Shown piece by piece: positions 36,559-56,005 of a DNA stretch of 64,000 bases. The DNA lies in contig NW_003314292.1 in assembly GCF_000143415.4 (NCBI RefSeq), positions 443,178 through 507,177 of the forward strand, given 5' to 3'. How positions within the stretch are numbered: the first letter of the stretch is position 1; each line of letters opens with the position of its first letter. A program made the translations under genes and the position numbers. This DNA comes from Selaginella moellendorffii. Its lineage: Eukaryota; Plantae; Lycopodiophyta. The notes below the pieces were generated by a model. The model was not told the DNA's origin, made no database searches, and saw only the letters and a program-made list of their open reading frames with translations.

Positions 36559-36936
36559 GACTGACAAGAGTTGTGGGTGGAACTTATGGGTGCATGCAAG
36601 ACTGAGAAGAAGGCAAAGAGTACCAGTGCTCCCAACGGATATGGGTGCATGCAACTGTGTGAGCCACCTAAGAACTACTCATGCTGCCTCAAGAATGGAT
36701 ATGGCTGCATGTGGCTTTGCAGGAATGGTGTGGAGCGCACTACTAGAATGGCTATGGCTGCACCAAGATGTGCCCCAAGAGAGTCACTTCTGGAAAGAGG
36801 TCAATGTCCAAGCGCTCTATGGTGTCGACCACCCATAAACTTTCGAAGACATCAATGTGTGTATGTGTGCTACTATAGATCTATGGCAGCCAGCTTTAAA
36901 TAAAAACTCCGATTTTCTTTTCTGAGTCTCGAGCTT
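36559..36936 (+). pseudogene. Decayed paralogue of the Cys-rich NGYG-repeat peptide gene at 46257 (last exon plus 3' UTR)
   Basis: Acceptor ttcag|, then LTRVVGG..YGCMQD*, NGYGCMQLC, KNYSCCLKNGYGCMWLCRNGVE and NGYGCTKMCPK, separated by frameshifts and a stop. The 3' UTR CTATAGATCTATGGC...AAATAAAAACTC...GATTTTCTTTTC.GAGTCT.GAGCT is shared. Confidence 0.85.
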
Positions 36937-37842
36937 AAAATCCACTTCCTTCTTTCAAGATACCCCGTGAAGTTTGCTTTTCAATCAAATTGATTGTGTG
37001 ATTGTGTCCAGTTCCAAAGCAGGAGTTTCTACAAAAGATCAAAGGTGAATAGATTCAAGCATGTATAAATAAAACAAGCCTTTCTCATTTTCATAGCTCC
37101 TTTTAGATGTGCCATTGGTGAATCGTGATTCCCATTGTTGGCAAGGGGGGATCGCCTCATGCAGCAGAATTGCGAACTTTGAGCATCAGATCGTCGTAAT
37201 GCTTTATTTCCGAGGATCTACGCCCCCAAATTTCATGATCAACTTTGAAACTCTTGGATCGAAATTTCGATACGATCAAAAGCTTCTTGATGTTCTTGGT
37301 GATATTTCCAAAGTATGTTTATAAATATTTAGTGAATTTAAGCAGTTTTAATAGAATGCTGCCAACTTGCAAACAATTGCAGCATTACATTGTGAAAAGC
37401 TCCGCAATGTTTTCTAAATGTCCTAAACTACACCATTAAACTCTTGTGGCCTGATGCTGGCTGCAGCAACAATCTGCTGGGGAGAAATGCCTGATGCAAT
37501 CCCAATTCTTTGTCAAACGAAAGAATTGAGCCATTCAAGTTCGTAAGCTCCACCTTCCTACAAAGTCCTCAAACATCCTCTAAGAACTGGACTGCATTGC
37601 CAATGAACCGGAGTATGAGGTTCGTGCCATTCTCGATTCCAAAATCCTTCCTCAAAACCACCAACTGCCCAGAAGTTCGTGGCTTTGGTTGCTGGAGCGC
37701 ATGTAGCTTGTGGAATAGCAGCTTAAGGTCTGCTGGGGAGGTGAAAGGAGTAGTTTTAAAAGCTGTCGTAGCTTCTCCTCAAGCTTGTAGTGACACTGCT
37801 TTTGCCGGCGTATAGATTTTCGGGAAGTCTCGAGATGGCTGT

Positions 37843-40280
37843 TTAGTCTGATTCCCATCTGATGTGCTTGGGAACCGAGGGCGGCTTTGGAGCGTCGAGA
37901 CTTCCTTCCAGATGTCGTTTGCGTGTATCACTTTGCCAGCCTTCAGGGCTTGGAGGAGCCTTGGCAATCCATGGATCCTGTGCTGCCAAAACCATACGCA
38001 CTACTCCTTGCAATTCTCTCAAGCCCCTCATGCTCGAGCTTGTCACCACCATGCCGTCAAACGCCACACACGCATTTGGATAGCTGGTCACATCAATCTC
38101 CACAACCTGTAAAACGAAAGAAAAACAACATTAAAACTTGGCTTGTCCGAAGGTGAATCCATCCATACCTTGGGATACCTCTGGCTGAAGTGCGTCAAGA
38201 TGACTTGCTCCGCTTGCATTCGACTTCCAACTTGCAGAGCCTCGCTCACGGTACAGTGCCGTTTCTTCCGAGCGTGACTTTCCAAGCAATCCTCAAACGT
38301 GGCCTCGTGAATGAGCAGCGTGCAGCCGGCTCCAGCTTGAATGAGCCGGTCCGAAGGTCGGGTGTCACCCGAGTAAACCAAGTGCCATCCAGTTTGTCCG
38401 TGTAGCACCAGACCATAGGCCTCGTAGCAGTGATTAACGGGAACACTGGCAATGCTCTTCAGCTGTAGAGTCTCTAGGACACGTCCAAGGTGGTGCGAGC
38501 CTTCAAATTCTTCGAAGTGCATCACTACGAAAGCTGGTAATGGAAAACCCGACTGTGCGTGAGCATTGCAAACCTGATAAGCAAAAATGATATGAGGAAT
38601 TCGCAGTCCTTGTCATGAAGCAAGAAAAGAAGAAACCTGTACCTCAGTAAGCCACTTTACGACGGCAGTGGATCCAATAACCAGTAGGGGCTTTGTTCTC
38701 TCCCGTGCTTGCGAGCAAACAATGGCCACAGCTCCCAGGACATGGTCGGCATGTTTGTGGGATAACCACAGACACTCGATAGAGTTGACGGCTTCCAAAG
38801 CTTTGGCCTCGCCGTAACTCCTGAAAATCTGTCCGAGCACGCCTTCACCAGCATCGAGCAGCATTGCAGCGGAGCCTCGGAGACGAAGTAAAACACCACT
38901 GCTTCCCCGGTACTTACTCGGCTCTGCCGAGCCCGTGCCGAAAAACTGCACCTCAAAGTCATCGCTCGAGCACACTGCTGTGCGGCTTTGTCCACAACTC
39001 TTGCGTAGCATACTTCGTTTCATGGCTCTTGCCACGAGCTGGTTGGAACTGCAACGCTGGCTCTCCATGTTGAGAAGTTTGTCTCTGAGCCAAGGCTGCA
39101 GTTTTAAGAGGTCCTCTTGATAGTTCGTGAAGTTGAAGTTTTCGATACATTTCGAGTGATCCATGCGCACGACAATGTCACCGCAGCTTCCCCGTTCCAA
39201 AACTATCCGCGAAAGAAGGTGACCACTTGTAAGGCTTGAACGTTTCGCTGCTGAAGGCTCGCACTCATTGCAGTTAGCTGGGATGGGAAAGAACTTCTTG
39301 CTAACCATGTTGAGCATCGCTGTGGTTCGTAAGGAAGCCTGGAATCCATACTGCGGCGAGCTTGCATTAACCAGGACATGGAACGACTGATAATTCTCAA
39401 TCCATCTGCTGTACTCTTCAGACGTCACCACTGGTCCCGGGCTCAAATGAATCACTGCTGCTATTCCTTGCGGGTGCTGCTCGCAGTGCAAGATGGCATC
39501 GGCTTCCATACCAGACAACGTCGAACAGTCTGGGATATCCAGTATGAGCAAAGAAGAATTAAGCTTCTTCAAGTAAAAAGTATACCCGAGGACAGTGGTG
39601 ACAGGAGAAGAACCTGGAGCTGTACAATCCGCAATGCTGTGGTTGCCTCTGGTATCTCTGACGAAAACAGGATTGGAGTCTTCATCGAGCTCAGGCAAGA
39701 GATCTTCCTCATGATGCCGAGAGAAAGATGCGTTTTGCTGGTAAACACAAGACTGGCAGCGGTTTCCCGACGCCAGAATGGGGAAGATAACGACATACTC
39801 GTCTTCAAAAACAGGTACGTTTCCCTCTGTCCATTCACTGACAAAAACCTGTAAGAAGCTGGGATCAGTTTTGCAGTAGCCACTTAAAATGCAAACTTGA
39901 AACTCACTTTTGGATGCCGCCAGCGAAAGATGTGACGAAGTGCGTGAACAAACGCAGCAGAACCCCGTGGCCCAGTCACTTCTAGTTTTTCGTGACCATC
40001 TTGAGCGAGCCTTAGAATGAGACCACCGATGCCACCCTGTGCCAAAAACAGAATCAAGTCATAGGTGATGGCAAGTCCGAAAACTTACAGCTGCAACTGG
40101 ACGAATCGAAGTAAGCACAAGGCAAGACAGCTTTGCACAAGGCCGAATCCTGTGCTCCAGAACAAGTCGACTAAAGCCCTCTGGAACATTCACCAGGTAC
40201 TGGCCTGCTCCTCCGCCATGCGACAGCAGCAATGAAGGACCGACTCCATCGCCACTAGCATTCAAAATCGTGACTTCCAT
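37843..40280 (-). CDS. Long-form tRNase Z (tRNase ZL / ELAC2-like), multi-exon
   Basis: N-terminal YLVNVPEGFSRLVLEH and GGIGGLILRL; C-terminal FFGTGSAEPSKYR, LLDAGEG, SHKHADH, VYSGDTRP, HEATF, HCT, THFSQRYPK and AFDGM. Confidence 0.93.
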
Positions 40281-40333
40281 CGCCTAAAACCCAAAACCTA
40301 GTTCAAAACTTCTCTGCAAAACGGGCGAGTTAG

Positions 40334-42727
40334 CTAGGAGAAAACAAAGAGAGATGACTTATTGCGTGACAGTTCGTTCTTGGAGGCTGAAGCAGCGTAT
40401 ATGTTCGACATAAGCATGCACGCCGTTTCCTCCTCCTCTTCAGTGTCCGCTTTCATCCTTTTCGCCCGCTCGGTGTCCGAATGGATTTTACAGGCACCCA
40501 GGATCGTCGTCCATGCCACTGGAGTTGGCTCATACGGCATTCCACCCAGTAGCTCCTCGGCCTCTTTCAGCCTTCCAGCTCTTCCCAGAACATCAACCAT
40601 TCCAACGTAGTGCTCCACGCCTGGTGCCAATCCAAAGTCTCTCCTCATCGACACAAAGTAGTCTCGGCCCTCGTCCACCAAGCCCAGGTGGCTGCACGCT
40701 TGTAGCACTGTCGTGAATATAATCTCGTCCAGCGCCATGCTCTCGAGTGCCATGCACCAGAACGTCTCCAGTGCCTCGTTGTTGAAGCCATGCTTTGCAT
40801 AGCCGGAGAAGAGTGCAGTCCATGTAGCCACGTCTCTCTTCACCATGTCGTCAAACACCGCTCTAGCTTCTCCAAGGCTTCCACACTTGCTGTACATGTC
40901 TACCAGCGAGTTCTGGACGACCGGGTCTCCGTCAAAACCATCTCGGACGATTTCCCTGTGAACCACCATTCCGTCTGCCAGGGCTCCCATGCCTGTGCAT
41001 GCGTTTATGACGCTAGCGTACGTAAAGCCATCCGGTCTCACGTCCCAAGTCTCCATCTCGTGATAAAGGTCGAGCGCCTTCTCCGGATGGCCACCTTGAG
41101 CATACGCCGAGATCATCATTGTCACTAGGATCGTGTCCTTTTGAGGTGTCAAGTCGAACATCCGCCTCACTTCCTCCAGATTGGCACACTTGAGGTACAT
41201 GTTGAGCAGAGAGTTTTTAATCACAAAGTCCAGCTCCATCTTCTCGGATAGAATCCGAGCGTGAATCTCCCGGCCCTTCGCGAGAGATCCCACGCTCGAG
41301 CATGCGCGGAGAACGCTCGCATATACGTACGCGTCGGGCTTCTCCACTCTAGCAATCATCTGTTCGTAGAGCTCCAGAGCCTCGGACGAATGACCATCTT
41401 GGGAGAAGGCCACGATCATCGTAGTCCAGGCAACCACGTCCTTGTTGGAGATCCTGTCAAAGACTTGCTTCGCGTCCTTGAGGCTCTTGCACTTGGCGTA
41501 CATGTTGACGAGGGCGCTGCTCACAACCACGTCGAGCTCACTGCCTCCAGCTCGCAGCCTCTCGTGAACAGCCTTTCCCTGTTCCAAGTCCCCGAGCCTC
41601 GAGCATGCGTCCAAGACGCTGGCAAACACGAACAAGTCCGGCCTCACTCCTTCCAGATCCATCCGCCTGTAAAACTCCAGCGCCTCCTTGAAGCTCTCGT
41701 GCCGGACGAGCGCTGCAACCATGGAGCTCCAAGAGATCACGTCTCTCCTCACTCCCATGCTGTTAAACACCTCCCTGGCCTCGTCCAATCTCCCACACTT
41801 GGAAAGCATGTCGAGCAGCGAGTTAAGCACTGGAGTCGTGGCTTCCAGTCCCTCGGACACCACCCTCTTGTAGAACAATCTCCCCTCCTCCGCAGCTCCC
41901 AGGTCCGAGCAAGCTCCAAGAACACACGACACCGTGAAAGCGTTTGGCGCTACGTCCATGGCCTTGAAAAGCTCCATCGCTTGCCGGGGATGCCCAGTGT
42001 GGGCATACGCTGCGATCATGGCAGTCCAAGCCACTGTATCCCTGTAGCTCATCCTGTCGAAAACTTCTCTTGCTCGATCCACGCTGCCACACCTCGAGTA
42101 CATTCCAATTAGCCCGGTTGCCACCACGATATCTGATCCACAGCCACAATCCACGATGTGAGAATGGATTCTCATGCCGGTAGGGAGATCCCCGGGCTCC
42201 AAGCAAGCCGCGAGGATCCCCGAGAAGAAGAAACTAGTCGGTCTTACCTTGGCGGTGTCCATCGCTCGGTAGAAATTCAGCGCCTCGCGCATTTGCCCGT
42301 TCTGGGTGTAAGCCATGATCATCATCGTCCACGAGAAGCTGTTCTTGGCATCGATCGCCTCGAAAGCCTCCCTGGCAAGATCCGGAGCGCCGCATTTCCC
42401 ATACATCTGGACAAGGAGGTTGCCGATGAGTGTGCTGCCGCTGTGATCGCTGCCTAGGACCCTCGCGTGGATCCGCTTGCTCGCCTCCAGGTCCCTGGAG
42501 ATCCCGCATTTCCGTATCAGCGCCGAGAAATCCATGAGGCCGACGCTCCTCTTGCGCTCGTCGAGAACCTCCTCCGCAAGTTTTGCCCACACGAGGAGAT
42601 TCTCTACCTGGAGACGCTTGAATCCGGCGATCCAGGAGAGGTAGCTTCCGGACAGCGATCGGAGCGGCTTGCCGGCGTGCCTGCCGAAGGAGACGATCGT
42701 CTCCCCGGCCCCGATGGAGGTATCCAT
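40334..42727 (-). CDS. PLS-class pentatricopeptide repeat protein with truncated E domain (intronless) and an extra N-terminal domain
   Basis: Repeated LV.MY.KCG....A..VFD.M..RDVV.W.AMI.AY and PD..TY.SVL.AC units; HY.GMVDVLGRAGRL.EAE; W.TILGACKIH; no DYW domain. First ATG at 42727. Confidence 0.95.
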   Translation of the reverse strand: MDTSIGAGETIVSFGRHAGKPLRSLSGSYLSWIAGFKRLQVENLLVWAKLAEEVLDERKRSVGLMDFSALIRKCGISRDLEASKRIHARVLGSDHSGSTLIGNLLVQMYGKCGAPDLAREAFEAIDAKNSFSWTMMIMAYTQNGQMREALNFYRAMDTAKVRPTSFFFSGILAACLEPGDLPTGMRIHSHIVDCGCGSDIVVATGLIGMYSRCGSVDRAREVFDRMSYRDTVAWTAMIAAYAHTGHPRQAMELFKAMDVAPNAFTVSCVLGACSDLGAAEEGRLFYKRVVSEGLEATTPVLNSLLDMLSKCGRLDEAREVFNSMGVRRDVISWSSMVAALVRHESFKEALEFYRRMDLEGVRPDLFVFASVLDACSRLGDLEQGKAVHERLRAGGSELDVVVSSALVNMYAKCKSLKDAKQVFDRISNKDVVAWTTMIVAFSQDGHSSEALELYEQMIARVEKPDAYVYASVLRACSSVGSLAKGREIHARILSEKMELDFVIKNSLLNMYLKCANLEEVRRMFDLTPQKDTILVTMMISAYAQGGHPEKALDLYHEMETWDVRPDGFTYASVINACTGMGALADGMVVHREIVRDGFDGDPVVQNSLVDMYSKCGSLGEARAVFDDMVKRDVATWTALFSGYAKHGFNNEALETFWCMALESMALDEIIFTTVLQACSHLGLVDEGRDYFVSMRRDFGLAPGVEHYVGMVDVLGRAGRLKEAEELLGGMPYEPTPVAWTTILGACKIHSDTERAKRMKADTEEEEETACMLMSNIYAASASKNELSRNKSSLFVFS

Positions 42728-42836
42728 AATCCCAAGAGCCCTAAATTTTCTTTCATTCAAAGGAGCTACATTGGAGCGCCATAGAAGCGCTCTCTTCCAG
42801 GTATTCAACTAGGCGATCGATCACTCCAGGGCATTC

Positions 42837-44313
42837 TCACGGGCACTGGCATTGCGATGGTGAATACGCCCAGGGTGATGGGATTGGGAATGGGGATAGG
42901 ATCTGCGGAGGCGGTGAGATCGTGGAATTTGGGTCTGGTTCTTGAGGCGATGCCGGTGGCAAGACATCCGGGTCTGGTTCTTGAGACGATCGAGGTGGAG
43001 AGGATGGAGAGAGATCTGGAGCGAAGATTTCGGGTTGTTCTTGAGGAGGTGCCGGTGGGGAATGGGATCTTTGAGACACTGATGGAGGAAGGACCAAAAC
43101 CACGTAGTTTGGTGTTGCTGCCGATGGAGGAGAAGGATTTGTAGAGGGCGCTGGTGATGGATTCGTGTCCTCGTATGCTCGATCAAGTGGTGGAGGAGCT
43201 GGAGTTGTGTCTGCTACACCAGTTGTTGGCGACAACGATGGAGAAGATGATGAGCTTGGTGGCGATACTGGGACTTCTTGATCGGGACTTTGCGGGAGAA
43301 ATGCTTCGGTGGGAGCTTGGCTTTGCGAGTCCGAAGGAGAAAGTTGTGGGGATTCTTCCGGGGTTTCTACAAGAGGTGGTGGTACCGCCGGAGCTTCTGT
43401 CAAAGAAGGTGATGGGCTTGAAGTGCCATCTTGTCCGGGCCGAGGACGAAGAAATAGATCAGATGGGGATGGTTCCTCCGGTGGCTGTGACAGTGGAGTA
43501 AGAGACTGCGAAGGTGCGACTGGGAATTCTCGAGAAGATGGTAGACTTTGCAGCGGAGAGAATGCCGGTGACAAGTCTGGGCTTTCGGCTGGGCTTTCGG
43601 CTGGAGGACTGGCTTCCTTGACAACAGGTTTAGCGATGGATGCTGCTGGAGCTGTTACGGTCGCCGATGGAGATGGAGCAAGAGCAGCGTCTTGGTGACG
43701 AGAACTTTTATGCTCAGAATGGTGCCCGTGGTCCGGGCTTTTGTGCCGTGACTGGTGATGGTGGGAGCGTTTATGGCCGTGGTGGCGATTGTGGTGGTGA
43801 GACTTTTTGGGATGGGAGACTTGAGGCGGCGATGCAGAAGCACTGGGACATTGTTCCGGTTGGAAGACAAAAGCCGCGACGTGCCGGCTGCCTCTGGTTT
43901 GCGCGAAATCTATATCCACCTCTCGACCATCTTGAGGTACAGCATTGTCGCAAGACCGTGGAAGTGAGCTCGTTATCACGCTCAGGCTGCATTTGGCACT
44001 CGGGTTTCTGAGATGAGCCACGAACTCGCCACTGGACCGGGTGTGGATGATCCTGGATCGATTGGTATCGGCACAGATCAGGTTGAGATAGACTCCTGCA
44101 AGGAAAAGAGAAGAGGCAGCGAGACTAGAAGAGAGAAGCTCGAAGTATACCTTTGAGTCCTTGCTGGGAGTGAGAGCAGTCACGGCAAACGACCGTACCC
44201 GTGAGCGCTACGTGCGAGTTTCTCTGGTGGTCATGGCGAACCTCCCTGCTAGAAACAAGCAGGCACGCTTGGAGGAGGACTGCTAGGATCAAACTGGCTC
44301 GAGCAAGCTCCAT
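42837..44313 (-). CDS. Ole e 1/PAC-domain protein with His patch and long Ser/Pro-rich AGP-like tail (2 exons)
   Basis: Signal MELARASLILAVLLQACLLVSS; LTGTVVCRDC..GLK|GVYLNLIC...T..SGEF...CSL...LPRSC; HHHNRHHGH; SP/AP repeats. Confidence 0.82.
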
Positions 44314-44694
44314 CTTCTTTGGCAACAGTGTAGAGGTAAAAACTCGGTTTTTATGGCTCGATCGATTGGTTCTACCCATGACATCTTCTTTGCATGCAGG
44401 CTCTAGGACGTGTGGGATCGACGTGAAGCATTTGATATCACCACCTAATTTTCCAGGCCGCTGGTGGTGATCCAAATCGATAAGTTTGATCAAGCAGGAA
44501 AAACAAGCGCTTTCTCGATGCATGGTTCCATCAAGGCAAGTGGTCGTCGGGTAATTCACTATCCAATGCCAATTCCCGTTGTCTTGATCTTCCTTTCGAT
44601 TTTCTCCAGGTTTATGGTGAGGGCGAGAGGGTGCTAAAGTTCAAATTTTTAAATTGTAATCAGTGATACTTTTGTTCTAGGGTTCTTCGCGGGG

Positions 44695-45940
44695 ATGGAT
44701 GTAGAAGCTCCTCCCGCTGATGCGGGGGATGCTATCCATCCCTCCCTTCTTGTTACTTCCGCCGACGATGGGAGTCGCGAATGGGAGAGCCAGTGCTGGG
44801 GGTGCTCCTCGTATCTCATCCTCCCTTTCTTCTCCGAGGCATTCAAGTGTGGATGGTGTGGAGCGGTCACACTGAGCAAGCCCAAGCAGAGAAGCAGCCA
44901 GCGATGGCGCAGGTGTGCTACCATCCGAGACTGGAGCTTGGTGGCAGTGGTTCTCATGATCATCGCTCTTGTCACTGGTAAGTTCTCAAGGTACTTTGCT
45001 TTCCTTCTAAAACGATCAAAGATAGGATTTTGCAATCACCCTCTGAGACCTTTGCTTTCCAGGTGGAGGAATATGGACTGTGTACCCGGTTTTATATCCA
45101 CAGCCAACTTGGAGTGGATGCTTCCACATTTTCATCGCGCTTTCTCTGGCTGGAGCAACGCTTGCGAGTTACAGTCTAGCAGCATTCACTCCAGCAGGAG
45201 CTCTAGCGAAGGTGCCGTGGGGATCACTCCAGCCCATTGGCAAATCAGCTCTAGATGGCTACACGTACTGCGCTTACTGCGAATGTCCCAAGCCTCCGCA
45301 AGCCCATCACTGTAGAACTTGCGGAACTTGCGTCATGGACATGGATCACCACTGCCCTTTCGTACGTTGTCTTCTTTTTGTGGTTTTGATTTTCACCTGA
45401 ACTGAAACTCTCTCCTTTTTTGGTATACTCTAGATCGGGAACTGTGTTGGAGCTCACAATCACCGGCATTTCATCCTGTTCCTGGTCTACGCGACGATAA
45501 GCAGCTGCTACGTTTTGCTCATGTCCGTGCTCGCGGGCTTAGCGATCTGGCCACCACTGCTGCAAAGATACCAAGGCTCTGGCGAGTGGGGATTGTTTCA
45601 CTCGGTGGGAACAATTCTAGCAGCGAGCTTTCTCGAGGCGTTTGAAGAGTTTGAGGAGGACGAAGACAAGGGGTTGCCGAGTGTATCGGCGAGGTCTCTG
45701 GCACTCATCTATCTCGTCATCACCGCCATGGCGATTCTGATCGGGCTTGCTCTACTCCTCCGCCAGCAGATACAGCTCTTGTACGCAGGGCAGACGTATC
45801 TGGAGTCGATCCAAGCAGGCGATGGCGAGCTTTTGCGGCCCGGGTGGCACAACCTGAGGCGATTGTTTGGGAAGAAGCATCCAGCTTTGTGGCTGCTTCC
45901 TGGATTCACATCCAAAGGGAGCTACTTGAAACTACAATGA
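44695..45940 (+). CDS. DHHC-CRD protein S-acyltransferase (PAT11-like), 3 exons
   Basis: CWGC...FKCGWCGA N-terminus; [22 protein letters not shown]|IGNCVG..NHR.F; TM segments; GW.NL..LFG. Confidence 0.92.
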
Positions 45941-46179
45941 GAGCTCGTTCTTGGCCGAATGGAATAGTTTAGTGTTCATTTAGATAAGATCAAACCCAAG
46001 ACAATAAGTTTTGCAGAAACAAGTCAATGTAATTGTATGGATACATAATATTAGCTGTCACTGTCCCTAGTTAAGGATCACAATGTAGAAAGTCTTAGGA
46101 TGTATGATAAAATAAAAGCTAATATTAAATACAATTTTTTGAAAAGAATATTCTCCAAAATTCTAGAATCTAATCCTTC

Positions 46180-46186
46180 TATAAAT
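46180..46186 (+). promoter_or_regulatory. TATA box of the Cys-rich peptide gene
   Basis: TATAAAT about 75 bp upstream of the ATG at 46257. Confidence 0.5.
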
Positions 46187-46256
46187 TGAGCACATCCGAG
46201 CCTCTTTCTATCGCATCCTTCTTTGTTTGTTTCTTGTTAGCTTGCTTCAAATAGCT

Positions 46257-46745
46257 ATGGCCTATCCTCGAGTTTCTTCCGTTCTTGTGCTGCCATTGCT
46301 GTTTCTAGCAATTACCAATGCTGCTCGTGTCTATGATGGAGGTAGCAAAGTTTTATTTGCATACATCTATCATAAAATGTGTGTTCTTGTTCCACAGTAA
46401 CGATCCTTGCCGAGGAGGAGGATGTGAGATATATGACTACTATGGTGGAAAACAGAGGTAGCTCAGCATATATTCACCCATGGCCAGGAGCTAAGCTCGT
46501 TGTTTCCATGTTTTGTTTTTGCAGTGCTCACAAGTGTTGTGGGCGACACTTACTGTTGCCTCAAGAACGGCTATGGGTGCCTGCAAAATTGTGACTCATC
46601 CAAGAACTACTCGTGCTGCCTCAAGAATGGATACGGCTGCGTGTGGCTTTGCGAGAATGGTGTGGAGCACTACTGCTGTGAGAAGAATGGCTATGGTTGC
46701 ACCAAGATGTGCCCCAAGTCTACACTCATGTCTGGCAATCTGTAA
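46257..46745 (+). CDS. Secreted cysteine-rich multi-repeat peptide precursor (121 aa; exons 46257-46341, 46398-46457, 46525-46745)
   Basis: Spliced translation: MAYPRVSSVLVLPLLFLAITNA-ARVYDGVTILAEEEDVRYMTTMVENRVLTSVVGD-TYCCLKNGYGCLQNCDSSKN-YSCCLKNGYGCVWLCENGVE-HYCCEKNGYGCTKMCPKSTLMSGNL*. Two phase-1 GT-AG introns keep the frame; upstream TATA and downstream AATAAA present. Confidence 0.85.
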
Positions 46746-48576
46746 AATGGATAATGTGTGGATGTGTATGCGTGCCGCTATAGATCTATGGCGGCCATTT
46801 TCAAATAAAAACTCAGTGGCTCACTCTCCGATTTTCTTTTCAGAGTCTTGAGCTATCCTCTATCCTCACTGACTTCTCGCATTTTTCCACCACATTTCCC
46901 AAGTTCAAATAAAAACCAACTGCTCTTTCATTGAAAGATCTCTCTTTTTCCAGAGTTCTTCTTTCAAGATGTGGCCTCACACACCAGGATTCATTAGCTT
47001 TCAGCAAGACTCGAGAGAATATTGTGGAAATCGCTTTGATCATGGAAGCCACTTTCGACTTGGGAAAGCAGACTTCACTAGGAGGAGGATGCAATTTAAG
47101 ACTTCCAGCGTGCGGGCACCGGTATAGATAGTTCAAAACAAACAAACGAGACTCCGACCCGGTCCCGGCTCCGGCCGCAGCAGTGTGATTTCTTGTTCGT
47201 TCGTTCGTATTTCATAAAAAGCAAGAACGATCCAAACATGTTCAATGTTGCAAGTAGTTTCATATAGCTCACTTTGGATGTGAATTCAGGAAGCAGGGCT
47301 ACAAAGCTGGGTGCTTCTACGCGACATTTTGCGGGCTGGGCTGTATTTGCTGGACAGAGGAGTACAGCAAATCGTTATATGGCAGTTATCAGAATCGTTC
47401 TTACCAAGTGAAACAATTCCAACTTTTGGTGAGATCGCTGAATCTGCGAGCACGGACATGAGCAAAACGTGGGACTGTGGCGTAGACTGGCTTGGATGAA
47501 GAGCCACTTTGATTGTTTAGATAAGAGTTTCTATGAGCTGCAGAATCATGTGCATGGCATCGTGCTTGCGTAAATGCAGCAAGACAGTAGCTCGCGAGTC
47601 GCTGGAGTTGCTCCAGCGAGAGAAATGTCCACTCCAGATTGGCTGTGGATATAAAAAAACTGGAATGACTGCTGGGCTAGAGGTGCGTCTTTTGATTATG
47701 TATATTTGTCATAGAGTCATCCGTGTCCATCGTAGCTTCCACATATTTCTTTAATTTGAAGTCTTTGAAGTGCTGCACCTCTTCAAGTGGCTTCAAACCT
47801 TGAGGCTATAAAAGTTTAGCACTAAAATCACAAACCTACAACACATAAGCTTAGCAATACCTGATTTCTAATCCTTCTTAAGGGAAGAAAATCCTTGGCA
47901 ACCTTATAAAATGCAAAGCTAGAAAGCAGTTGTTAAGAAACAAAGTCACCTTTTAGGTCAAGTGAGGGATCATAGCCTTGTTTCACTTTCCTGATGGCAT
48001 CTGTTGCCATGCTGGAGTTTATAGCATTAAACACAGCCAGAGAGCATAATCTAAGTTTATGCGTTTGGAACATTTATGTGTTTGCTCGGTAAGTATGTTG
48101 AGGACTGTAATTGGTCTCACCGGCTTGAGAAGAAAGCTCTTTTCTTGCAGAGGTAAGAGATGTTCATCCACTAGGAGGAAACACACGAGAGAATCCAGAA
48201 TGCTAATCCTCTCTCAGTTGATGCAAGGCGTTTTCACCAGGCAGCGGACTCTCATTCTTGGCCTCTTTCGAAGTGAAGTTCTTACATTGAGCTAGAGGTC
48301 GTGAAGAAAACACGCAGCGCTTCCAGTCCAGAGAAAAGCCCTATGGAGCAAACCTACAACCGGGCTGTAAGAGAAACACATCAAAGCACAATCTTCGCAA
48401 CGGGGAGCTGTCTGGAACAAAAGGACATCTCCCAACACGCCATTCGTGTTGGCATTTAGACAATCCGTAAGTTCTTTTGTTTTTGCTCTCTTCTTTAATT
48501 TAACTTGCAAGAGGCCGAGCAAGAGCCAGAAAGAAGAATTCCCAAGGCTGGACAGGGGAAGCTTATAAATTTCACA

Positions 48577-50631
48577 CTAGCGTACGGACAAGAACTTGAG
48601 GAGAGACCTTGCTTTCCTCCTCGCGCGAGGCGATCCAGACGCGATCAGCTCCTGCAAGCTCTCCAGAAGCAGCGCACTGGACGATCCGGAGCTCATGTCT
48701 CGCGATTCCTGCTGCGTCTGCTGCTCCACCATGAGGCAGTCCCGGATCATATCGCCACCGTGCTTGCACAGCGCCAGAAGCACCGACAGCGAGTTCTCCT
48801 TCCCTTTGACGCTCCCAGTGCGCAGCAGATTCACCAGCAGTGGAATCGCCAGTAGATCGTCGCTGAGAGCTTTCAATCCTTCGTTGCTCTCTCCTAGCAG
48901 AGCTAGCACCGCCAACGCATCGTCCTGGACATCGCCATCTTTCGAGAGCATCGCCATCAAAACTTCGATAGCTCCCGCGTTCACCACCCTGGCCCTGTTC
49001 CCCGGATAGAGCAGCAGATTAAACAGCGCGCTCGTCGCGTCCTTCTTCGCCTGGAGCGATCCTTCCAGCAGCAACGTCACCAGCGCCGGGATCGCCACTG
49101 CCCTGCTGCCGATCCGGATCCGGTGCTCGTCCGTGGAGGACAGACTAAAGATCGCCGCTGCAGCGTTTTGCCGAGCCTCCATGCTAAGTCCCTGTTCCAC
49201 CACCGAGAGTATCGGGTCCAAAGCATTCGCGGCCATGATCAGCTTCTTGTTGTTGTCGTAGATCGAAAGGTTGAGCAGCGCAGTGACAGCATTCTCTTGG
49301 GTCTTGGAGTCATTACACGCGAGCAGCGGGACCAGGAAAGGGATAGCGCCAGCTTCCGCAATGCAGATCCTGTTCTCCGTCCCGTTCTTCGCGAGTAGTC
49401 TAAGCTCGTAAGCCACTTGTCTCTGGACATCGATCGAGCCTGTGGCCAGCTTGCCGACAAGAAATGCCGAGGTGGTCTTTGCGATCTCGAGAGCCTCTCT
49501 CGAGTTGGAAATGTCGTCGTCGGGAAAGCCAGCGTCGAATAACTCGAGGCTGACGTTGTTGTCGTCACACCAATGGAAGATGAGGCTTCGTAAAGCGTAG
49601 TTTGGAATGAGGCCGAGGTGTATCAGCTTCTGGCCGCTTGTGGGGCACGTAAAGTGACCGGCAGCAATCCATTTCTGGATGTGTTCCTTGTCGTATGTTT
49701 GCCCGGTCGCAATGGTCACCGGGTTCCTCATAAGTTCCAAGGAGATCGGGCACCGGAACTCGTCTGGAAGAACTCCGACTCTCTCCTTGAAACCATCAAG
49801 CTCGGCCATAGTCTCCTCGAAGGCCTCTTCCCCAGCTCTATACAAGAGCCTTGCCGTGGACCGGACGAGACGTATCAAACCTCGCAATGTCGAGTATGCC
49901 ACCTTGTCTCTGGACGCGACCTTCTCTCTCAATTCTTCCAGCAGTCCCGTAAGTTCCAGCTTACAGTCGCTCCAATTTTTCAAGCCGAGGCCAGCAAAGA
50001 GCTTCTGGAGTCTCTCGAGGGAAACGTCTGATGATGGTCCGTCACCTCTTTCCATAAGATCGCATAGCTCGGCTTTGAGGAGCTCCTGCCCGGGATCTAA
50101 GGCCTTGCACCAGCCTCTAGCGCTTTGCAACTTCAAGAGCAGGACGTGCTCCTTTATCTCGTCCGAGATCTCCAGCAAACTTAGCGGAATTACCTCCAAA
50201 GCCGCGGCCATCTCCTCGTTGGCCACCTCAAACTTTTGGATCGTCTCTGTGGAGCTCACCATCGCCCACGTTATGCTACTGCTCTGGCTACACGAATCCA
50301 CGAGGAGATTACACTTGGCGAGGAACTCGTGCATACTCCTAAAAGCCAAAAGTGCTGACGGAGGCAGCGGTGGATTTGTATCCCTGATCTCCTCGAAAAA
50401 TGGACCCAAGAGCTTCACCCGCCGGACAATCCCCGAAACGCAGTGCCGGTAGCACGCCTGTGGTCTTTCGTGAACCGAAACCTGGTGTGCCAATTCGATC
50501 AAGTCCCTCACTAGCAGCATTCCCGGATGGCTTGGATACGTCTGATGATGGTTCGCGGCATGGAGCAGCGCAAACGGCCTCTTGAGCTTCATGATCCTCC
50601 TACGCTTGCTAAAGTACCAGAAATCGGCCAT
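48577..50631 (-). CDS. Plant U-box E3 ligase (UND + U-box + ARM repeats), intronless
   Basis: U-box PDEFRCPISLELMRNPVTIATGQTYD...CPTSGQ...LIPNYALRSLI; ARM repeats ELRLLAK...ENR.CIAEAGAIP and QENAVTALLNLS; GS.RARRKA..LL. Confidence 0.96.
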   Translation of the reverse strand: MADFWYFSKRRRIMKLKRPFALLHAANHHQTYPSHPGMLLVRDLIELAHQVSVHERPQACYRHCVSGIVRRVKLLGPFFEEIRDTNPPLPPSALLAFRSMHEFLAKCNLLVDSCSQSSSITWAMVSSTETIQKFEVANEEMAAALEVIPLSLLEISDEIKEHVLLLKLQSARGWCKALDPGQELLKAELCDLMERGDGPSSDVSLERLQKLFAGLGLKNWSDCKLELTGLLEELREKVASRDKVAYSTLRGLIRLVRSTARLLYRAGEEAFEETMAELDGFKERVGVLPDEFRCPISLELMRNPVTIATGQTYDKEHIQKWIAAGHFTCPTSGQKLIHLGLIPNYALRSLIFHWCDDNNVSLELFDAGFPDDDISNSREALEIAKTTSAFLVGKLATGSIDVQRQVAYELRLLAKNGTENRICIAEAGAIPFLVPLLACNDSKTQENAVTALLNLSIYDNNKKLIMAANALDPILSVVEQGLSMEARQNAAAAIFSLSSTDEHRIRIGSRAVAIPALVTLLLEGSLQAKKDATSALFNLLLYPGNRARVVNAGAIEVLMAMLSKDGDVQDDALAVLALLGESNEGLKALSDDLLAIPLLVNLLRTGSVKGKENSLSVLLALCKHGGDMIRDCLMVEQQTQQESRDMSSGSSSALLLESLQELIASGSPRARRKARSLLKFLSVR

Positions 50632-51302
50632 CCTCGAGCCAGAAGAATCCTGGAAGGCGATCGATTCGCGGAATTTCTCGCGCCTAGTGGAAAATTTCTG
50701 CCAAGAACCTACTAGATCACGACGAAATATCACAAGAAAACCCCGATTCTCTGCGTGCCGTGGTCGATCACTGGAAGATTCTCAACGCCGTGCTTGATTG
50801 GGACTGCGAGAGAATCTGGCACCGAGAGAACTCGCCGTGAAGAATCTTGTCCGAGAGTCTAGAGAGCCCTAAAACCCTAGCGCTAGATAGAAGGATGTGA
50901 TAGCCGAGGAATGCGACAATACTACCTCCTCGCGCCTTGCCGTCCATAGCGTTTTTCAAATATGTGCCATATGGCCGCTAAAAGAGTTAAAAAAGGATTC
51001 TTCCGGAATGCCGCCATTTGGCAGCACCACAGGCCTCTAGCCCCGCCATTGGCCAGAAGGAACAAACTGCCACGTGGATGGTGACGATGGGCACTATGCC
51101 AACGGTTGGATGTGCCAATTGGCGGTTGTCCTAGCTAGGGCTGCTTGTCTTGTCCGGTCAAGCGTGGAAGAAAGAACGCAAAGCGCCAAGGCAGTGAGGT
51201 AAAAATCTTCTTTCGTGGAGATCGTCGAGCGATCGATCCTCGATCGATCGATTGATCGATTGGATCGGCGTGCGCGGCCGTGGATGGATCTTAAGAAGCT
51301 AG

Positions 51303-52144
<842 letters not shown>

Positions 52145-52298
52145 GCTCGTGGAGATTTTGTTTTCCTTGCGATTGAGTTTATCCACCACTGTTAGCATTG
52201 AGTACCGGTTAATGCAAAGGCATTTCTTCTTCCATGGATATTTCTAACGAGGTAAGGAAATAACTGAGATCTATGGGACGCACACAAAGGTCTTGACA

Positions 52299-53288
52299 AT
52301 GGCAAAGTCATGGGCATTGCAATTGCCATCATTGTCACTAGTTCCAAAGATTCAGCCGAGAAGGACTCCCTTATGCCGGTCACACAAGGTAACTATTTGT
52401 TCGTCTCTGCTGGAAGAAACATCAGAGTCTTCGAGGATTCGAGCCAGAGGCCTAGAAGATGAGAAGGCCGGGCTGTGCGCCACACTCCTCGGGCTACATG
52501 CTCCTTTGCTACTTTTTCAATCGGACATAGCCATGGCAGCGGAAGAAGCAGGTCCTGGCTACTCGGCCGCGAGTTATTACACTTCGCTGGGATTGTTCGT
52601 GCTCGCATTGCCGGGTCTCTGGTCGCTCATCAAACGCTCGGCAAAATCTAAGGTACTGTTTTGAGTATCTGAAAACTAAATAATCTCTTTTCACCTTTCA
52701 GATAGTCCGGAAGACTTACGTAGTTCCTGGCCCATCTCAAGAGAGTGGCAAAGCACCAAAACAAATTGCTGGTGAAATCTCATCGTTTTTCACCAGAAAC
52801 AACTTCACCATTGTCGACAGCGGTGAAGTAGTCAGGTAAACGTTTGTTTCTGCTTTCCAGCAATTCCCGTCATTTTGTTTCCGTGTTCTAGATTCGAAGG
52901 ACTGATGGTTCCAAGCCGGGGCCAAGCTGCTTTCATCATCTTTTGCACGTTTTTGAGCTTAGCTAGCGCAGCTTTGGTACTCACGATCACAGTTCCAGTG
53001 GTAGGAGACAAGTGGTATTGGCTCACGGCTTTCAGTCCCCTCGCGTAAGTTTGTCACAGATTTCTTAAGTTTCTCGTTAGAGGTCACTCATGAAACTGAT
53101 GCAGTGGCGCTTACTATTGGACGAATGCATCTCGAAAAGAGGAAATCCAAGTAAAGCTCGTGGTGGCCGACGATGAGTCTTCCACAGATGTATTGGTTCA
53201 AGGCGATGACGAGCAAATCGAGCAGCTTCGTAGGGAGCTGGGATTCATGGAGAAAGGCATGGTTTATGTGAAAGGCATTTTGCAATGA
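52299..53288 (+). CDS. CCB1: Cofactor assembly of complex C subunit B CCB1 (plastid cytochrome b6 heme ci maturation), 4 exons
   Basis: GYSAASYYTSLGLFVL.LPGLWSLIKRS.KSK|IVRKT; FEGLMVPSRGQA; YYWTNASRKEEI.VK; QGDDEQIE.LR.EL..MEKGMVYVKG. Confidence 0.95.
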
Positions 53289-53538
53289 GGTAACTTCGGA
53301 TACATAGCGAGCTCGTCGAACTTACAATACAATAAAGGGAAGACTTACAGCTCTTTCTCTTTCTTTTTTTTTTTTTCCCTGTTGAGGGCAGAGAGAATTC
53401 CTGTGATGAAACAGGAAGCAAATTTACAGTGCGGCTGCCGAGAAGATGGTTACCAAAACTGATTGTGGAGAAACAATCTTACAGTGGTGGCCGACTTTCG
53501 TTGCTACGTTGGCCCCCTCAAGTAAAGTTTTTGGTTTT

Positions 53539-54228
53539 TTACTGTGCTTGTTCTAGTCCAGCAGTGGAGCCATTGTTCTTTATGTTCTTCAAAATCTGCG
53601 ATTAATTTGGAAGCTTTGATTCAATGTAGGAACAAAAAAACTTTCGCTTTTTTCACCTGTCGCAGCATGAATGTTTCCTTTTGTAACGTGTTTACCCGTT
53701 CCTCTAGCTCCGCATTCCTGAGCTCCAAATCCCGGGCTTTTGCTTCGAGCTCAACAACGTAAGCCTTTTTTCTCTCCCTGGCTTGTTGTGCCGAGACTCG
53801 ATTGCGTAAAAGTCTGCACAAAGAAAAGCTTTGTTTCAAGTTAGAGAAAAGAAACAAACTGTCAAAGAAGCCGAGCTTAGAACTACGAGTGAAAGATGGG
53901 AGTACCTTTTCAATCGCTTGTGTTCTTTGTCAGCAGGAACAGCACCCCTCTTGCGAGAATTGGATGCTGCCGTGTCTTGCTCTGGCAACGCAGTCACGAT
54001 TTTACCTCCAGGTAAGTCGGGAACCTTTCTTACTTCCGAGTCACTCTCATTTCCTGCCCAATCCTCTACTCAATGCAAGAGCTAAAACGAAGAGCGAAAG
54101 AAGAGAAACGAAAGGAAGAAACAAAAACAAAAGAACTTACCGTCCACTTTCATCTCGGCGTTGGGAAGAGCCATCAAATCGCTGAATTGCTTGTGCATTG
54201 TCGGCGACGCTGATGCCGCTGCTTGCAT
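53539..54228 (-). CDS. HY5: bZIP transcription factor HY5-like, 4 exons
   Basis: [11 protein letters not shown] (COP1-binding VP motif); [10 protein letters not shown]|[19 protein letters not shown]; leucine zipper; LRQ|ILKN. Confidence 0.95.
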
Positions 54229-56005
54229 CCTGGAACAAATCTGGAGCTGGCTGGAGGCAGAGAGAGAGAGAGAGGAACTTCTAGCAATCGTTCCTGCCCG
54301 CCCGCCCGCCCGTCCAAGAAAACCAAGAAAAAAAAAAACCAAGCGAAATGAGGCTCGACATCTCCCGTTTCGCTCGTCGCGTACCTCAGAATCATCGCGT
54401 CGATTGCTATGGATGCGTCCTCTCGTCGCGATTGGGGCAATGCCGAGCTGTGGAAGCGAGAAACACCAGCACCAAGAAAACTCCTCCACTCTAGGGTTCC
54501 TGACGCCAGCCCGTCCGGCACGTCACAAACAGGTCAGATTTGACGGGCATCAAAACGGCATCCGACACGCAACCGTTAAAATTGACGGCTAGAAACGTGC
54601 CGCGTGGCAAATATTAGTTATTTTAATCTGAAAATCATGAAAAAGAAGAGTTTGAAATATTGATTATAAACAATTTAAAAATCCAGAAAGGTGGAATATG
54701 GATGTGTGATGATAGAATTCCTCAGTCGGAGCTAGAGACTGTGCAGTAATAGGCTAAGTATCCATGGTTCAATCAAGGATGGCGATGATCCCTTTAAAGA
54801 ATCTCTCATAGTTGATTCATTAATCTAAAATTTTAATCTTATGGCCAATGGAAACCAGGGAAACTTCATTATTTCTACTCTCGACTCTCTCGACTCCAGC
54901 AAGTTCTCCCGTCGGTGTGCCGCGTCGGCTATGGAGGAGGAATGACGAATCACGCCTTCTGTAAGATCCTCCCCGGAGCTACCGTGGCTATACTTGGTTA
55001 CTAGGGTTTGCGGGCCCGCGGGCATGGATCTGGTGGTGACGCCTCTTTGATGCAGCTGCTAACATCACTACCATTATAGGCAGACATAAAAAAAACCATC
55101 GCTCAATTCAGTCTGGCACCCTTGTTAGTAAGCCCTTTAAAAAATATAGCCTCTGCGACAATGACAGCAACGCTCGGAGAAGCCATCCTGTTTTCTTTTT
55201 CGACCTTTGTGCTGATTCCCTAAGCTTGCGAGCTTCCTTTTGTGACTCCATCTCCCACATACATTGTTAATAACCTAATATGATGCCTTTTCCCAAAATC
55301 TTTATATATTGAAATTGTAAACTAAATATAGATATTAATATTTTCCATGTTCACACCCTTCGAAATAGGCCAAGAATGCTAATTTGCTGCCTGCTGGCAC
55401 AAAACCATGAGATTGAGGAAACCCAAACCTATGCAAAAGCTTCTGGATTCTTTTAGTGTGTTTTAGAACATCTCTTCCAACTTTTCTCGCGTCCTTTATC
55501 TGTCAAGAAACAAGAAAATCGAAATCGCTCAGGAACTTAAAAAGCCACTAGTTTTAAAGCTGAGCGTCTCACCTCTCTAGCGCACGCATACCTCTGCATA
55601 TACGAGTTTTCTCTAAGCCAGCGTAAGTTGGAGCTGTCTTTCTGGTGCTTATTAGTTTTCCAGTTGTCTGAAAGGAGGAAACAGACCTCTCCCTTCAGAA
55701 ACTCCATCAGATCGTGGAGTTTATGGTGGGAGCTTGGACATGGTGCAGTGACATCGCCCGATCAAGACCGAAGATCCGCGTTCTGAAGAATCCATCTGTA
55801 GATTGAAAGGAGATATTTCTTTCCTGCTCACCTGGAGGAAGAGGATGAGGCTGATAGCTCGTCAGTCTAGACCAGGCCAGGAAAGAAAACGAAGCAACTA
55901 GAACAAAAACCAGGGAAATGACTTTGGTGATTATAAGATGTGAGCTCTTCCCGTTGAAGCATTGTTAATTCCATTACGTTGAATAGAATGATTTGCCAAA
56001 TAAAT

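What the first reader, a model, noticed from the sequence alone, without database searches (positions are those of the whole stretch)
46257..46745. Candidate undescribed multi-module cysteine-rich peptide system: signal + acidic propeptide + 3x CC-x-KNGYG-C-x3-C
Seen in sequence: a compact 3-exon gene that the ORF track catches only in fragments. Exon 1 encodes a signal peptide and exon 2 an acidic spacer (AEEEDVR). Exon 3 carries three 20-aa modules with invariant CC-x-KNGYG-C-xxx-C and variable positions (LQN/VWL/TKM). The invariant residues use different synonymous codons in different modules (AAC GGC TAT GGG / AAT GGA TAC GGC / AAT GGC TAT GGT), which points to selection on the protein. 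Established knowledge: the CC-Xn-C-X3-C four-Cys framework in a multipeptide precursor is that of Impatiens Ib-AMPs (CC-X8-C-X3-C), and CC-C-C is also conotoxin framework I. It does not fit defensins, thionins, LTPs, snakins, heveins, cyclotides or the Bowman-Birk loop. Inference: the precursor is either cut (Asn in the linkers KN|YS and EN|GV could be asparaginyl-endopeptidase sites) into ~14-20 aa two-disulfide hairpin peptides for defence or signalling, or it folds as one three-fold 12-Cys mini-protein. I do not recognise a named family.
Basis: partly seen in the sequence, partly recalled or inferred. Interest (0 to 1): 0.88.

Follow-up and report, generated by a model that had tools for sequence, protein, structure and literature searches.

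The report
Spikemoss secreted cysteine-rich repeat protein
A small, transcribed and correctly spliced gene of the spikemoss Selaginella moellendorffii encodes a secreted protein with three copies of a 20-residue, four-cysteine unit; its family of about 15 proteins was found only in this species, matches no characterised family, and has no tested function.

Summary
A three-exon gene (46257-46341, 46398-46457, 46525-46745, + strand) encodes a 121-aa protein identical to NCBI SELMODRAFT_443224. It has a signal peptide, an acidic pro-region and three CC-x6-C-x3-C modules (CCxKNGYGCxxxC). Transcript contigs from four studies cover only the exons, show both GT..AG junctions, and carry a poly(A) tail. 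All 15 related protein clusters come from S. moellendorffii. They have 3 or 4 modules, every inter-module linker is exactly 7 residues, and the cysteine domain is under purifying selection (dN/dS 0.12-0.38). UniRef's automatic name "Granulins domain-containing protein" fails the tests run here: the Pfam search gave no match, and the published granulin cysteine spacing fits 0 of 15 proteins. The Ib-AMP analogy is partial: the framework type is the same, but the spacing differs, the modules are not basic, there are no long spacers, and the proposed Asn cleavage sites are not conserved. The likeliest product is one intact 12-Cys tandem-hairpin protein acting outside the cell, probably in defence or binding. 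Fold, disulfide map and function remain unknown (AlphaFold pLDDT 46-54, no fold matches). The scan already found this family on other DNA of this genome (s1-402708, s1-398900). It is an undescribed lineage-restricted cysteine-rich family of moderate interest.

The parts
46180..46185 (+). TATAAA box, about 30 nt upstream of the transcript contigs' 5' ends
   Evidence: Sequence read. Contig 5' ends lie at 46210-46230 in four runs.
46210..46842 (+). Transcribed unit (about 510 nt after splicing)
   Evidence: Contigs of runs X1, X2, X3 and X10 cover only this span minus the introns. A poly(A) loose end follows 46842 in X2.
46257..46341 (+). Exon 1 CDS: start codon, signal peptide (hydrophobic core at about residues 6-18, likely cleavage near TNA|A) and start of the pro-region
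   Evidence: Identical to P0001.
46342..46397 (+). Intron 1 (56 nt, GT..AG, phase 1)
   Evidence: Joint in X1, and loose ends that read on into exon 2 or back into exon 1 in all four runs. Zero depth in the bin 46351-46391.
46398..46457 (+). Exon 2: acidic pro-region (VTILAEEEDVRYMTTMVENR)
   Evidence: The pre-pro region is under relaxed constraint, dN/dS 0.4-1.2.
46458..46524 (+). Intron 2 (67 nt, GT..AG, phase 1)
   Evidence: Joint 46457|46525 seen in contigs of all four runs.
46525..46745 (+). Exon 3 CDS: the 12-Cys domain of three modules, plus the stop codon
   Evidence: dN/dS 0.12-0.38 against paralogs.
46554..46592 (+). Module 1, CCLKNGYGCLQNC
46614..46652 (+). Module 2, CCLKNGYGCVWLC
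46674..46712 (+). Module 3, CCEKNGYGCTKMC, followed by the family-wide P-K
46804..46809 (+). AATAAA polyadenylation signal, about 33 nt before the poly(A) site
   Evidence: Sequence. Poly(A) loose end after 46842.
36561..36935 (+). Decayed paralog of the four-module type (third exon and 3' flank only). It has an in-frame stop, frameshifts and deletions.
   Evidence: The collinear second copy of this region (L001 417-560) holds even more decayed remains.

Best explanation
This is an expressed nuclear gene of Selaginella moellendorffii for a small secreted cysteine-rich protein. The signal peptide directs it into the ER (inferred). There the 12 cysteines of exon 3 form six disulfides (inferred). 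The product is most likely ONE intact tandem-repeat domain: three 20-residue units, each a short beta-hairpin turning at N-G-aromatic-G and carrying four Cys, joined by rigid 7-residue linkers. The acidic N-terminal pro-region may or may not be removed. The gene belongs to a family of about 15 proteins with 3 or 4 modules that evolves by birth and death and by in-register gain or loss of whole modules. The protein most likely acts outside the cell by binding a target, either as a defence protein or as a binder of cell-wall or microbial polysaccharide through its exposed Tyr/Phe/Trp residues. Membrane lysis by a cationic peptide is less likely. Shown: the gene model, transcription, splicing, polyadenylation, the family, selection on the Cys domain, and the absence of a match to characterised families. 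Inferred: secretion, disulfides, hairpin fold, non-cleavage and function.
For: Gene model and identity to SELMODRAFT_443224. Spliced, polyadenylated transcripts in four studies; the variant letters there (46697 T>C and several 3'-UTR positions) match, where I compared (46697), or probably match the second genomic copy, suggesting that both are transcribed. Hydrophobic N-terminus. Family of 15 protein clusters, all S. moellendorffii, from three word-indexed searches and one exhaustive profile search of 1.84 billion representatives. Architecture over 52 modules: C-x3-C always, CC-x6/7-C, all 37 linkers exactly 7 aa, D/E after the fourth Cys, an aromatic residue before CC, Asn at loop position 3 in 48 of 52, 12 or 16 Cys per domain, and the last module always followed by P-K. 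The fixed linker length and the lack of any conserved Asn/Asp or dibasic site argue for a single folded repeat domain. Purifying selection on the Cys domain (dN/dS 0.12-0.38) against a relaxed pre-pro region (0.4-1.2). The same three-exon structure in four paralogs. Module 1 of this gene looks like a module-1/module-2 chimaera of the four-module paralog, which points to in-register unequal crossing-over. The window holds a pseudogene copy. AlphaFold places modules 2 and 3 as beta-hairpins, at low confidence. The Cys domain is near neutral (pI 7.6; family range 5.8-8.9).
Against: No protein-level evidence exists for secretion, processing, disulfides or activity. Structure models are poor (mean pLDDT 45.9 and 54.2), and no fold match was found, so 'hairpin' and 'single domain' rest mostly on sequence regularities. 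Whole modules are gained and lost, which would also suit independently released peptides. The defence or binding function is argued only by analogy with other plant cysteine-rich families. The apparent restriction to one species may reflect poor sampling of lycophytes in the protein databases.
Confidence: 0.55

Rival explanations
1. It is a polyprotein precursor. The three modules are cut apart, as in Impatiens Ib-AMPs, into roughly 20-residue two-disulfide peptides that act as antimicrobial or signalling peptides.
For: The framework type is the same: CC ... C-x3-C, four Cys in a 20-residue unit, several units per transcript (Ib-AMPs as described in PMC4695807). Module number varies between 3 and 4 among paralogs by whole-unit indels, so each unit is a self-contained set of four Cys.
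Against: Linkers are only 7 aa, invariant in length in 37 of 37 cases, and conserved at both ends. Module net charge is -1.3 to +1.8, not strongly basic. The exhaustive profile search found no Impatiens or other non-Selaginella protein.
Confidence: 0.15
2. It is a divergent true granulin domain, as UniRef's automatic name says: a stack of beta-hairpins pinned by a ladder of six inter-hairpin disulfides.
For: UniRef names P0001-P0004 and P0008 'Granulins domain-containing protein'. The core Y58-K113 is 56 aa, about 6.3 kDa, with 12 Cys including CC doublets. That is the size and Cys count of a granulin (PMC1310530). AlphaFold suggests hairpins, and granulins are hairpin stacks (PMC11035057).
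Against: The Pfam search of all nine members scanned returned no family at all at E<=10, so Pfam's granulin model was not matched either. The published motif CX5-6CX5CCX8CCX6CCX5CCX4CX5-6C fits 0 of 15 proteins even with +-2 tolerance in every loop. No two CC doublets lie 4-10 residues apart; here they are 18-19 apart. The family profile matched no granulin entry in the PDB sequences at E<=10, and there was no structural hit. Close alleles are labelled inconsistently (P0008 'Granulins', P0011 'Uncharacterized'), as expected of a borderline cysteine-driven match. Plant granulin is reported only as the C-terminal domain of papain-like proteases (PMC1310530).
Confidence: 0.07
3. It is an intact secreted cysteine-rich ligand for a receptor (developmental or reproductive signalling), not a defence protein.
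For: Many small secreted plant cysteine-rich proteins are receptor ligands (general knowledge; families such as EPF and RALF appear in the papers listed). The Cys domain is under purifying rather than diversifying selection.
Against: The family shows the traits usual for defence-type families: lineage restriction, many paralogs, a tandem cluster, pseudogenes and variable module number. No orthologues were found outside the species. Neither point is decisive.
Confidence: 0.15

Closest known systems
Paralogs in S. moellendorffii (SELMODRAFT_442072, 442049, 440532, LOC9658317, the cluster on the 4.46-Mb scaffold, and SELMODRAFT_422294/439279); the family was already noted by this scan as s1-402708
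   Same: Same three-exon structure, signal peptide, pro-region, CC-x6/7-C-x3-C modules, 7-aa linkers and C-P-K ending. Identity to P0001 is 45-93%.
   Different: 3 or 4 modules. NGYG in this clade, NGFG or NxxG elsewhere. An extra residue before the third Cys in some. All are unnamed or hypothetical; no paper cites them.
Ib-AMP1-4 of Impatiens balsamina
   Same: 20-residue units with four Cys as CC ... C-x3-C, several units on one transcript (PMC4695807).
   Different: Ib-AMPs are strongly basic. By my recollection they have CC-x8-C spacing and are excised from between long acidic spacers. Here the spacing is x6/7, the modules are near neutral, the linkers are a fixed 7 aa without conserved cleavage sites, and no sequence relationship was detected. 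This is a resemblance in framework, not membership.
Granulin/epithelin module
   Same: About 6 kDa, 12 Cys with CC doublets, probably built of beta-hairpins. It carries the automatic UniRef label.
   Different: The cysteine spacing does not fit. No Pfam or PDB sequence match. It stands alone rather than sitting at the C-terminus of a papain-like protease. The module count varies in units of four Cys.
Hevein-type chitin-binding domain
   Same: Local similarity of CC-x3-G-aromatic next to a Cys, and exposed aromatic residues. This is my own recollection of the hevein motif, so it is only a lead.
   Different: The hevein core pattern matches 0 of 15 proteins and the Pfam search returned no family, so no chitin-binding domain was matched. 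Hevein is an eight-Cys single domain, not a four-Cys repeat.

Membership tests
Granulin (Pfam PF00396; motif in PMC1310530) | 12-Cys spacing CX5-6CX5CCX8CCX6CCX5CCX4CX5-6C, with four CC doublets 5-8 residues apart | tested here: not met
   Regex on 15 family proteins: strict 0/15, +-2 tolerance in every loop 0/15, any two CC doublets 4-10 apart 0/15. Motif quoted.
Granulin (Pfam PF00396; motif in PMC1310530) | Match to the Pfam granulin profile | tested here: not met
   hmmscan of exon 3 and of nine full-length members returned no family at all at E<=10. Precomputed Pfam is '-' for all hits. The SMART and PROSITE models that may underlie the UniRef name could not be run.
Granulin (Pfam PF00396; motif in PMC1310530) | Stack of beta-hairpins with a ladder of inter-hairpin disulfides | tested here: inconclusive
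   AlphaFold pLDDT 45.9 and 54.2. Hairpins are predicted for modules 2 and 3 only. No match in Foldseek/PDB, VIA-align wide or the Atlas.
Granulin (Pfam PF00396; motif in PMC1310530) | In plants, found only as the C-terminal domain of papain-like cysteine proteases | tested here: not met
   The 121-aa stand-alone protein has only a signal peptide and a pro-region ahead of the Cys domain. Context statement from PMC1310530.
Ib-AMP family (Impatiens) | Four-Cys framework with CC and C-x3-C motifs in 20-aa units | tested here: met
   CC-x6/7-C-x3-C in all 52 modules. Family description. The exact CC-x8-C spacing, which I recall from memory, is 0/15.
Ib-AMP family (Impatiens) | Highly basic mature peptides | tested here: not met
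   Module charges at pH 7 are +0.4, -1.3 and +1.8. Domain pI is 7.6. Family domains range from pI 5.8 to 8.9.
Ib-AMP family (Impatiens) | Peptides excised from a precursor with intervening propeptide spacers | tested here: not met
   Linkers are always 7 aa with no conserved processing residue. Actual processing cannot be tested with these tools.
Ib-AMP family (Impatiens) | Detectable sequence homology | tested here: not met
   Profile search of 1.84 billion representatives: the only real hits are S. moellendorffii proteins. I did not verify that the Ib-AMP precursor is in that library.
Ib-AMP family (Impatiens) | Disulfides CysI-CysIII and CysII-CysIV | not testable with these tools
   Needs disulfide mapping or NMR.
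Plant secreted cysteine-rich peptides/proteins (general class) | N-terminal signal peptide, small size, even number of conserved Cys in the mature part, multigene family | tested here: met
   Hydrophobic core at residues 6-18. 121 aa with 12 Cys, all in exon 3. 15 paralog or allele clusters.
Hevein / chitin-binding type 1 | C-x4,5-CC-S-xx-G-x-C-G core and a match to Pfam's hevein-type chitin-binding model | tested here: not met
   Pattern 0/15. The Pfam search returned no family.

The most novel reading that the evidence does not exclude
The 20-residue CC-x6-C-x3-C unit is a new disulfide-stapled beta-hairpin building block, and the three or four units stack into a previously unseen cystine-rich repeat fold. 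This fold would be a convergent counterpart of the granulin hairpin stack, invented in the lycophyte lineage and used as an apoplastic binding or defence scaffold. Alternatively, the units are released as a lycophyte counterpart of Ib-AMP peptides.
Probability: 0.3. Interest if true: 0.6.

Novelty: new variant of a known kind. Interest (0 to 1): 0.4.

Why it matters
Lycophytes are the sister group of all other vascular plants, and their secreted peptide repertoire is poorly described. This is a well-supported, expressed gene family with its own cysteine framework and modular build. No Pfam or solved-structure match was found, and no paper in the searched library cites it. It is a ready candidate for peptide chemistry (a compact 6-8 kDa, six-disulfide scaffold or 2-kDa hairpins) and for studies of early vascular-plant immunity. 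It also shows that the public 'Granulins domain' label on these proteins is probably a cysteine-driven false assignment. The function is unknown and plants have many such lineage-specific families, so the find is useful rather than surprising.

Tried and rejected
1. Pfam on exon 3, exon 1 and nine full-length members: the search returned nothing at E<=10.
2. PDB sequence search with the protein and with the family profile: nothing, apart from one chance hit to ornithine aminotransferase at E 1.7.
3. AlphaFold2 on the full protein and on the Cys domain with the 9-sequence alignment: pLDDT 45.9 and 54.2, too low to trust.
4. Fold searches with the second model: Foldseek/PDB had no hit below E 6.5, VIA-align wide had no Z>=2, and ESM Atlas gave TM<=0.39 to unrelated families. 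Given the model quality, these say nothing about novelty of the fold.
5. ESM Atlas by features: one unnamed streptophyte cluster at 0.78, below the lead threshold; no usable hit among named clusters (searches failed because the machine was busy).
6. Exhaustive profile search: besides family members it returned an ankyrin-repeat protein (P0009, 14 short stretches, judged spurious) and P0010, a probable mis-fused gene model joining a family member to a kinase.
7. JGI metagenome contigs: 270 pattern matches, none confirmed by tblastn.
8. Literature: no paper holds the locus tags or accession numbers, and nothing relevant turned up on Selaginella cysteine-rich repeats.
9. Alpha-hairpinin pattern C-x3-C...C-x3-C: it matches only across module boundaries with a CC in between, so it was rejected.
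10. Transposon carriage of the gene: homology between paralog loci is confined to about 46179-46900, from the TATA box to just past the poly(A) site. The flanking inverted repeats are an inverted partial copy of the last exon of the neighbouring DHHC gene, not terminal inverted repeats of a mobile element. Not pursued.
11. A direct profile-profile comparison with granulin sequences was not run. No tool-supplied granulin sequence was at hand and I did not type one from memory.

Full report
**1. What is there**

Reading 45900-47100 and splicing three segments gives a 366-nt CDS. The exons are 46257-46341, 46398-46457 and 46525-46745 on the + strand. The introns are 56 and 67 nt, both GT..AG and both phase 1.

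The 121-aa product is identical to P0001, which is NCBI EFJ22178.1/XP_002976509.1, 'hypothetical protein SELMODRAFT_443224' of Selaginella moellendorffii.

- Exon 1 encodes a hydrophobic N-terminus (9-residue Kyte-Doolittle means of 2.3-3.2 over residues 6-12) ending in TNA|A.
- Exon 2 encodes an acidic stretch of 20 residues.
- Exon 3 encodes all 12 cysteines, as CCLKNGYGCLQNC, CCLKNGYGCVWLC and CCEKNGYGCTKMC at a 20-residue period.

The framework is CC-x6-C-x3-C. The synonymous-codon argument holds. Modules of one gene share only about 32 of 60 nt, Tandem Repeats Finder finds no DNA repeat, and 7 of the 10 invariant codons differ synonymously in at least one module.

**2. Expression**

Logan contigs of four runs from four different studies (X1, X2, X3, X10) lie on the exons only; the runs' record does not say they are RNA, but the spliced, poly(A)-tailed contigs show it. 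The bin inside intron 1 has zero depth in all four.

- The joint 46457|46525 is present in all four runs.
- The joint 46341|46398 is present in X1. All four runs also have loose ends reading from exon 1 into the first bases of exon 2 and back.
- Contig 5' ends lie at 46210-46230, about 30 nt after a TATAAA at 46180-46185.
- A poly(A) run follows 46842, about 33 nt after an AATAAA at 46804-46809.

The gene is therefore transcribed, spliced as predicted and polyadenylated. The variant letters in the contigs are 46697 T>C and several 3'-UTR positions. At 46697, the only one I compared, the variant is the letter of the second genomic copy, so that copy is probably expressed too.

**3. Genomic setting**

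Window 37436-56602 is collinear at 96-97% identity with GL377586.1 around the gene for P0002 (L001). The neighbours are the same: lactamase-B-like, PPR, an unknown gene, DHHC, then the cysteine-rich gene, PUB U-box/ARM, Arf, CCB1 and bZIP. P0001 and P0002 (93% identical, with a 4-codon indel in the pro-region) are thus the two haplotype copies, or very recent segmental duplicates, of one locus.

About 10 kb upstream, at 36561-36935, lies a decayed copy of the four-module type with a stop codon, frameshifts and deletions. The partner region carries even more broken remains.

Homology between paralogous loci is confined to about 46179-46900, that is, the transcription unit with its introns.

**4. 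The family**

Three word-indexed searches, and one exhaustive HMM search of 1.84 billion representative proteins, returned 15 related protein clusters. Every one is from S. moellendorffii. They sit at about six loci, one of which is a cluster of eight or more genes on a 4.46-Mb scaffold. JGI metagenome contigs gave nothing.

The databases' hits came only from NCBI, UniRef and EukProt. The transcripts that evidently exist in Logan RNA runs did not appear as proteins. The absence of relatives in other lycophytes therefore says little.

Across 52 modules:
- C-x3-C is invariant, and CC-x6-C or CC-x7-C is the rule.
- All 37 inter-module linkers are exactly 7 residues.
- The residue after the fourth Cys is D/E, or P-K after the last module.
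- An aromatic residue precedes CC.
- Asn occupies loop position 3 in 48 of 52 modules, and a Gly precedes the third Cys.
- Domains hold 12 or 16 Cys.

Four paralogs share the three-exon structure. Nei-Gojobori estimates give dN/dS of 0.12-0.38 for the Cys domain and 0.4-1.2 for the pre-pro region. The Cys domain is the selected part.

Module 1 of this gene matches module 1 of the four-module paralog in its first third (20/20 nt) and module 2 in its last third (15/20 against 10/20). This points to an in-register unequal crossover that changed the module number.

**5. Intact protein or polyprotein?**

Four points favour an intact domain:
- The linkers are short, fixed in length and conserved at both ends.
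- The Asn residues proposed as asparaginyl-endopeptidase sites are not conserved. KN becomes KA, KK, KD, IT or IK, and EN becomes ED, DS or ES.
- There are no dibasic sites.
- The modules are not cationic: charges are +0.4, -1.3 and +1.8, and the domain pI is 7.6.

Whole-module indels would also suit autonomous peptides, so the polyprotein reading is not excluded. I give it 0.15.

**6. Comparison with known families**

*Granulin.* UniRef auto-names P0001-P0004 and P0008 'Granulins domain-containing protein', while the near-identical allele P0011 is 'Uncharacterized'. The core Y58-K113 has granulin's size and Cys count: 56 aa, 6.3 kDa, 12 Cys. Granulins are stacks of beta-hairpins with laddered disulfides (PMC11035057).

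The tests fail, however:
- The Pfam search returned no family for any member at E<=10.
- The published motif (PMC1310530) fits 0 of 15 proteins, even with +-2 in every loop.
- CC doublets are 18-19 residues apart rather than 5-8.
- There is no PDB sequence hit.
- In plants, granulin is known only as the tail of papain-like proteases.

I read the label as a borderline, cysteine-driven match. This is an inference, because SMART and PROSITE could not be run here.

*Ib-AMPs.* These share the CC plus C-x3-C framework in 20-aa units on one transcript (PMC4695807). They differ in spacing, charge, spacer architecture and detectable homology.

*Hevein and alpha-hairpinin.* Neither pattern fits.

**7. 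Structure**

AlphaFold2 with the shallow family alignment gave mean pLDDT 45.9 for the full protein and 54.2 for the Cys domain. Modules 2 and 3 were drawn as beta-hairpins turning at G-Y. Foldseek/PDB, VIA-align against 48,161 chains, and the ESM Atlas shape search gave nothing meaningful.

With models this weak, the results neither support nor exclude a new fold. PMC11035057 also warns that AlphaFold mis-assigns disulfides in such peptides.

**8. Verdict**

This is a real, expressed, selected, secreted-type modular cysteine-rich protein of an undescribed and so far species-restricted family. It is probably not cut at the proposed sites, is not an Ib-AMP, and is not a granulin.
- The most likely mode of action is inference only: an intact, disulfide-stapled tandem-hairpin protein that binds an extracellular target in defence or at the cell wall.
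- The same family was already reported by this scan on other DNA of the genome (s1-402708, followed up; s1-398900), and this very stretch was read again as s1-431157.
- My results agree with s1-402708 and add several things: the test and rejection of the granulin label, the haplotype partner, the pseudogene, the selection contrast, and the linker and processing-site analysis.

Noticed in passing
window 36561-36935 (+): Decayed four-module-type paralog (third exon and 3' flank only) with an in-frame stop, frameshifts and deletions. The collinear second copy of the region (L001 417-560) keeps even more scrambled remains, partly inverted.
   Followed up: partly
window 37436-56602 vs L001 (GL377586.1:1299106-1319615): The two are collinear over 19 kb at 96-97% identity with the same gene order. 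This is the second haplotype, or a very recent segmental duplicate, of this locus. The window's gene (P0001) and P0002 are its two copies.
   Followed up: partly
window 46398-46842: Between the two copies, exon 2 (11.7%), exon 3 (6.8%) and the 3' UTR (10.4%) differ more than exon 1 (0%), intron 2 (1.5%) and the 5' flank (3.2%). Exon 2 also has a 12-nt indel. Counts are small. This may be gene conversion from paralogs or faster change of the coding part.
   Followed up: no
window 45510-45935 and 47254-47470: Four inverted-repeat pairs (21-44 nt, 82-91% complementary) show that an inverted, shortened copy of the last exon of the upstream DHHC palmitoyltransferase gene lies just downstream of the cysteine-rich gene. 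The gene therefore sits inside a small inverted duplication. One low-depth contig in X1 joins the two arms.
   Followed up: partly
window 46825-47100 (-): A 473-nt contig of run X1 at low depth (13) lies downstream of the gene, laid in minus orientation (contigs do not show an RNA's strand). This is weak transcription of unknown origin past the poly(A) site.
   Followed up: no
P0010 (SELMODRAFT_438189, 4.46-Mb scaffold): This 610-aa public gene model starts with a family member (signal peptide plus two modules) and runs on into a protein-kinase-like tail. It is probably a mis-fused annotation of neighbouring genes.
   Followed up: no
P0008 vs P0012 (SELMODRAFT_422294 / LOC9654180): Two public models of one gene. 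The older 115-aa model skips the pro-region exon that the 145-aa model includes.
   Followed up: no
P0017, P0018 (4.46-Mb scaffold): Two family members carry 13 Cys: a lone Cys plus linker remnant (..STEC-DSGVKYY-CC..) ahead of three full modules. Either module 1 was truncated or the gene model is wrong.
   Followed up: no
window 32001-36000 and 56001-60000: Two stretches of low G+C (about 35% against 47% for the window). Not examined; they may be repeats or transposon remains.
   Followed up: no
run X16 ('organism B'): A 2025 run labelled with a different organism code holds 36% of the stretch's 31-mers. It could be another Selaginella sample or a mixed sample.
   Followed up: no
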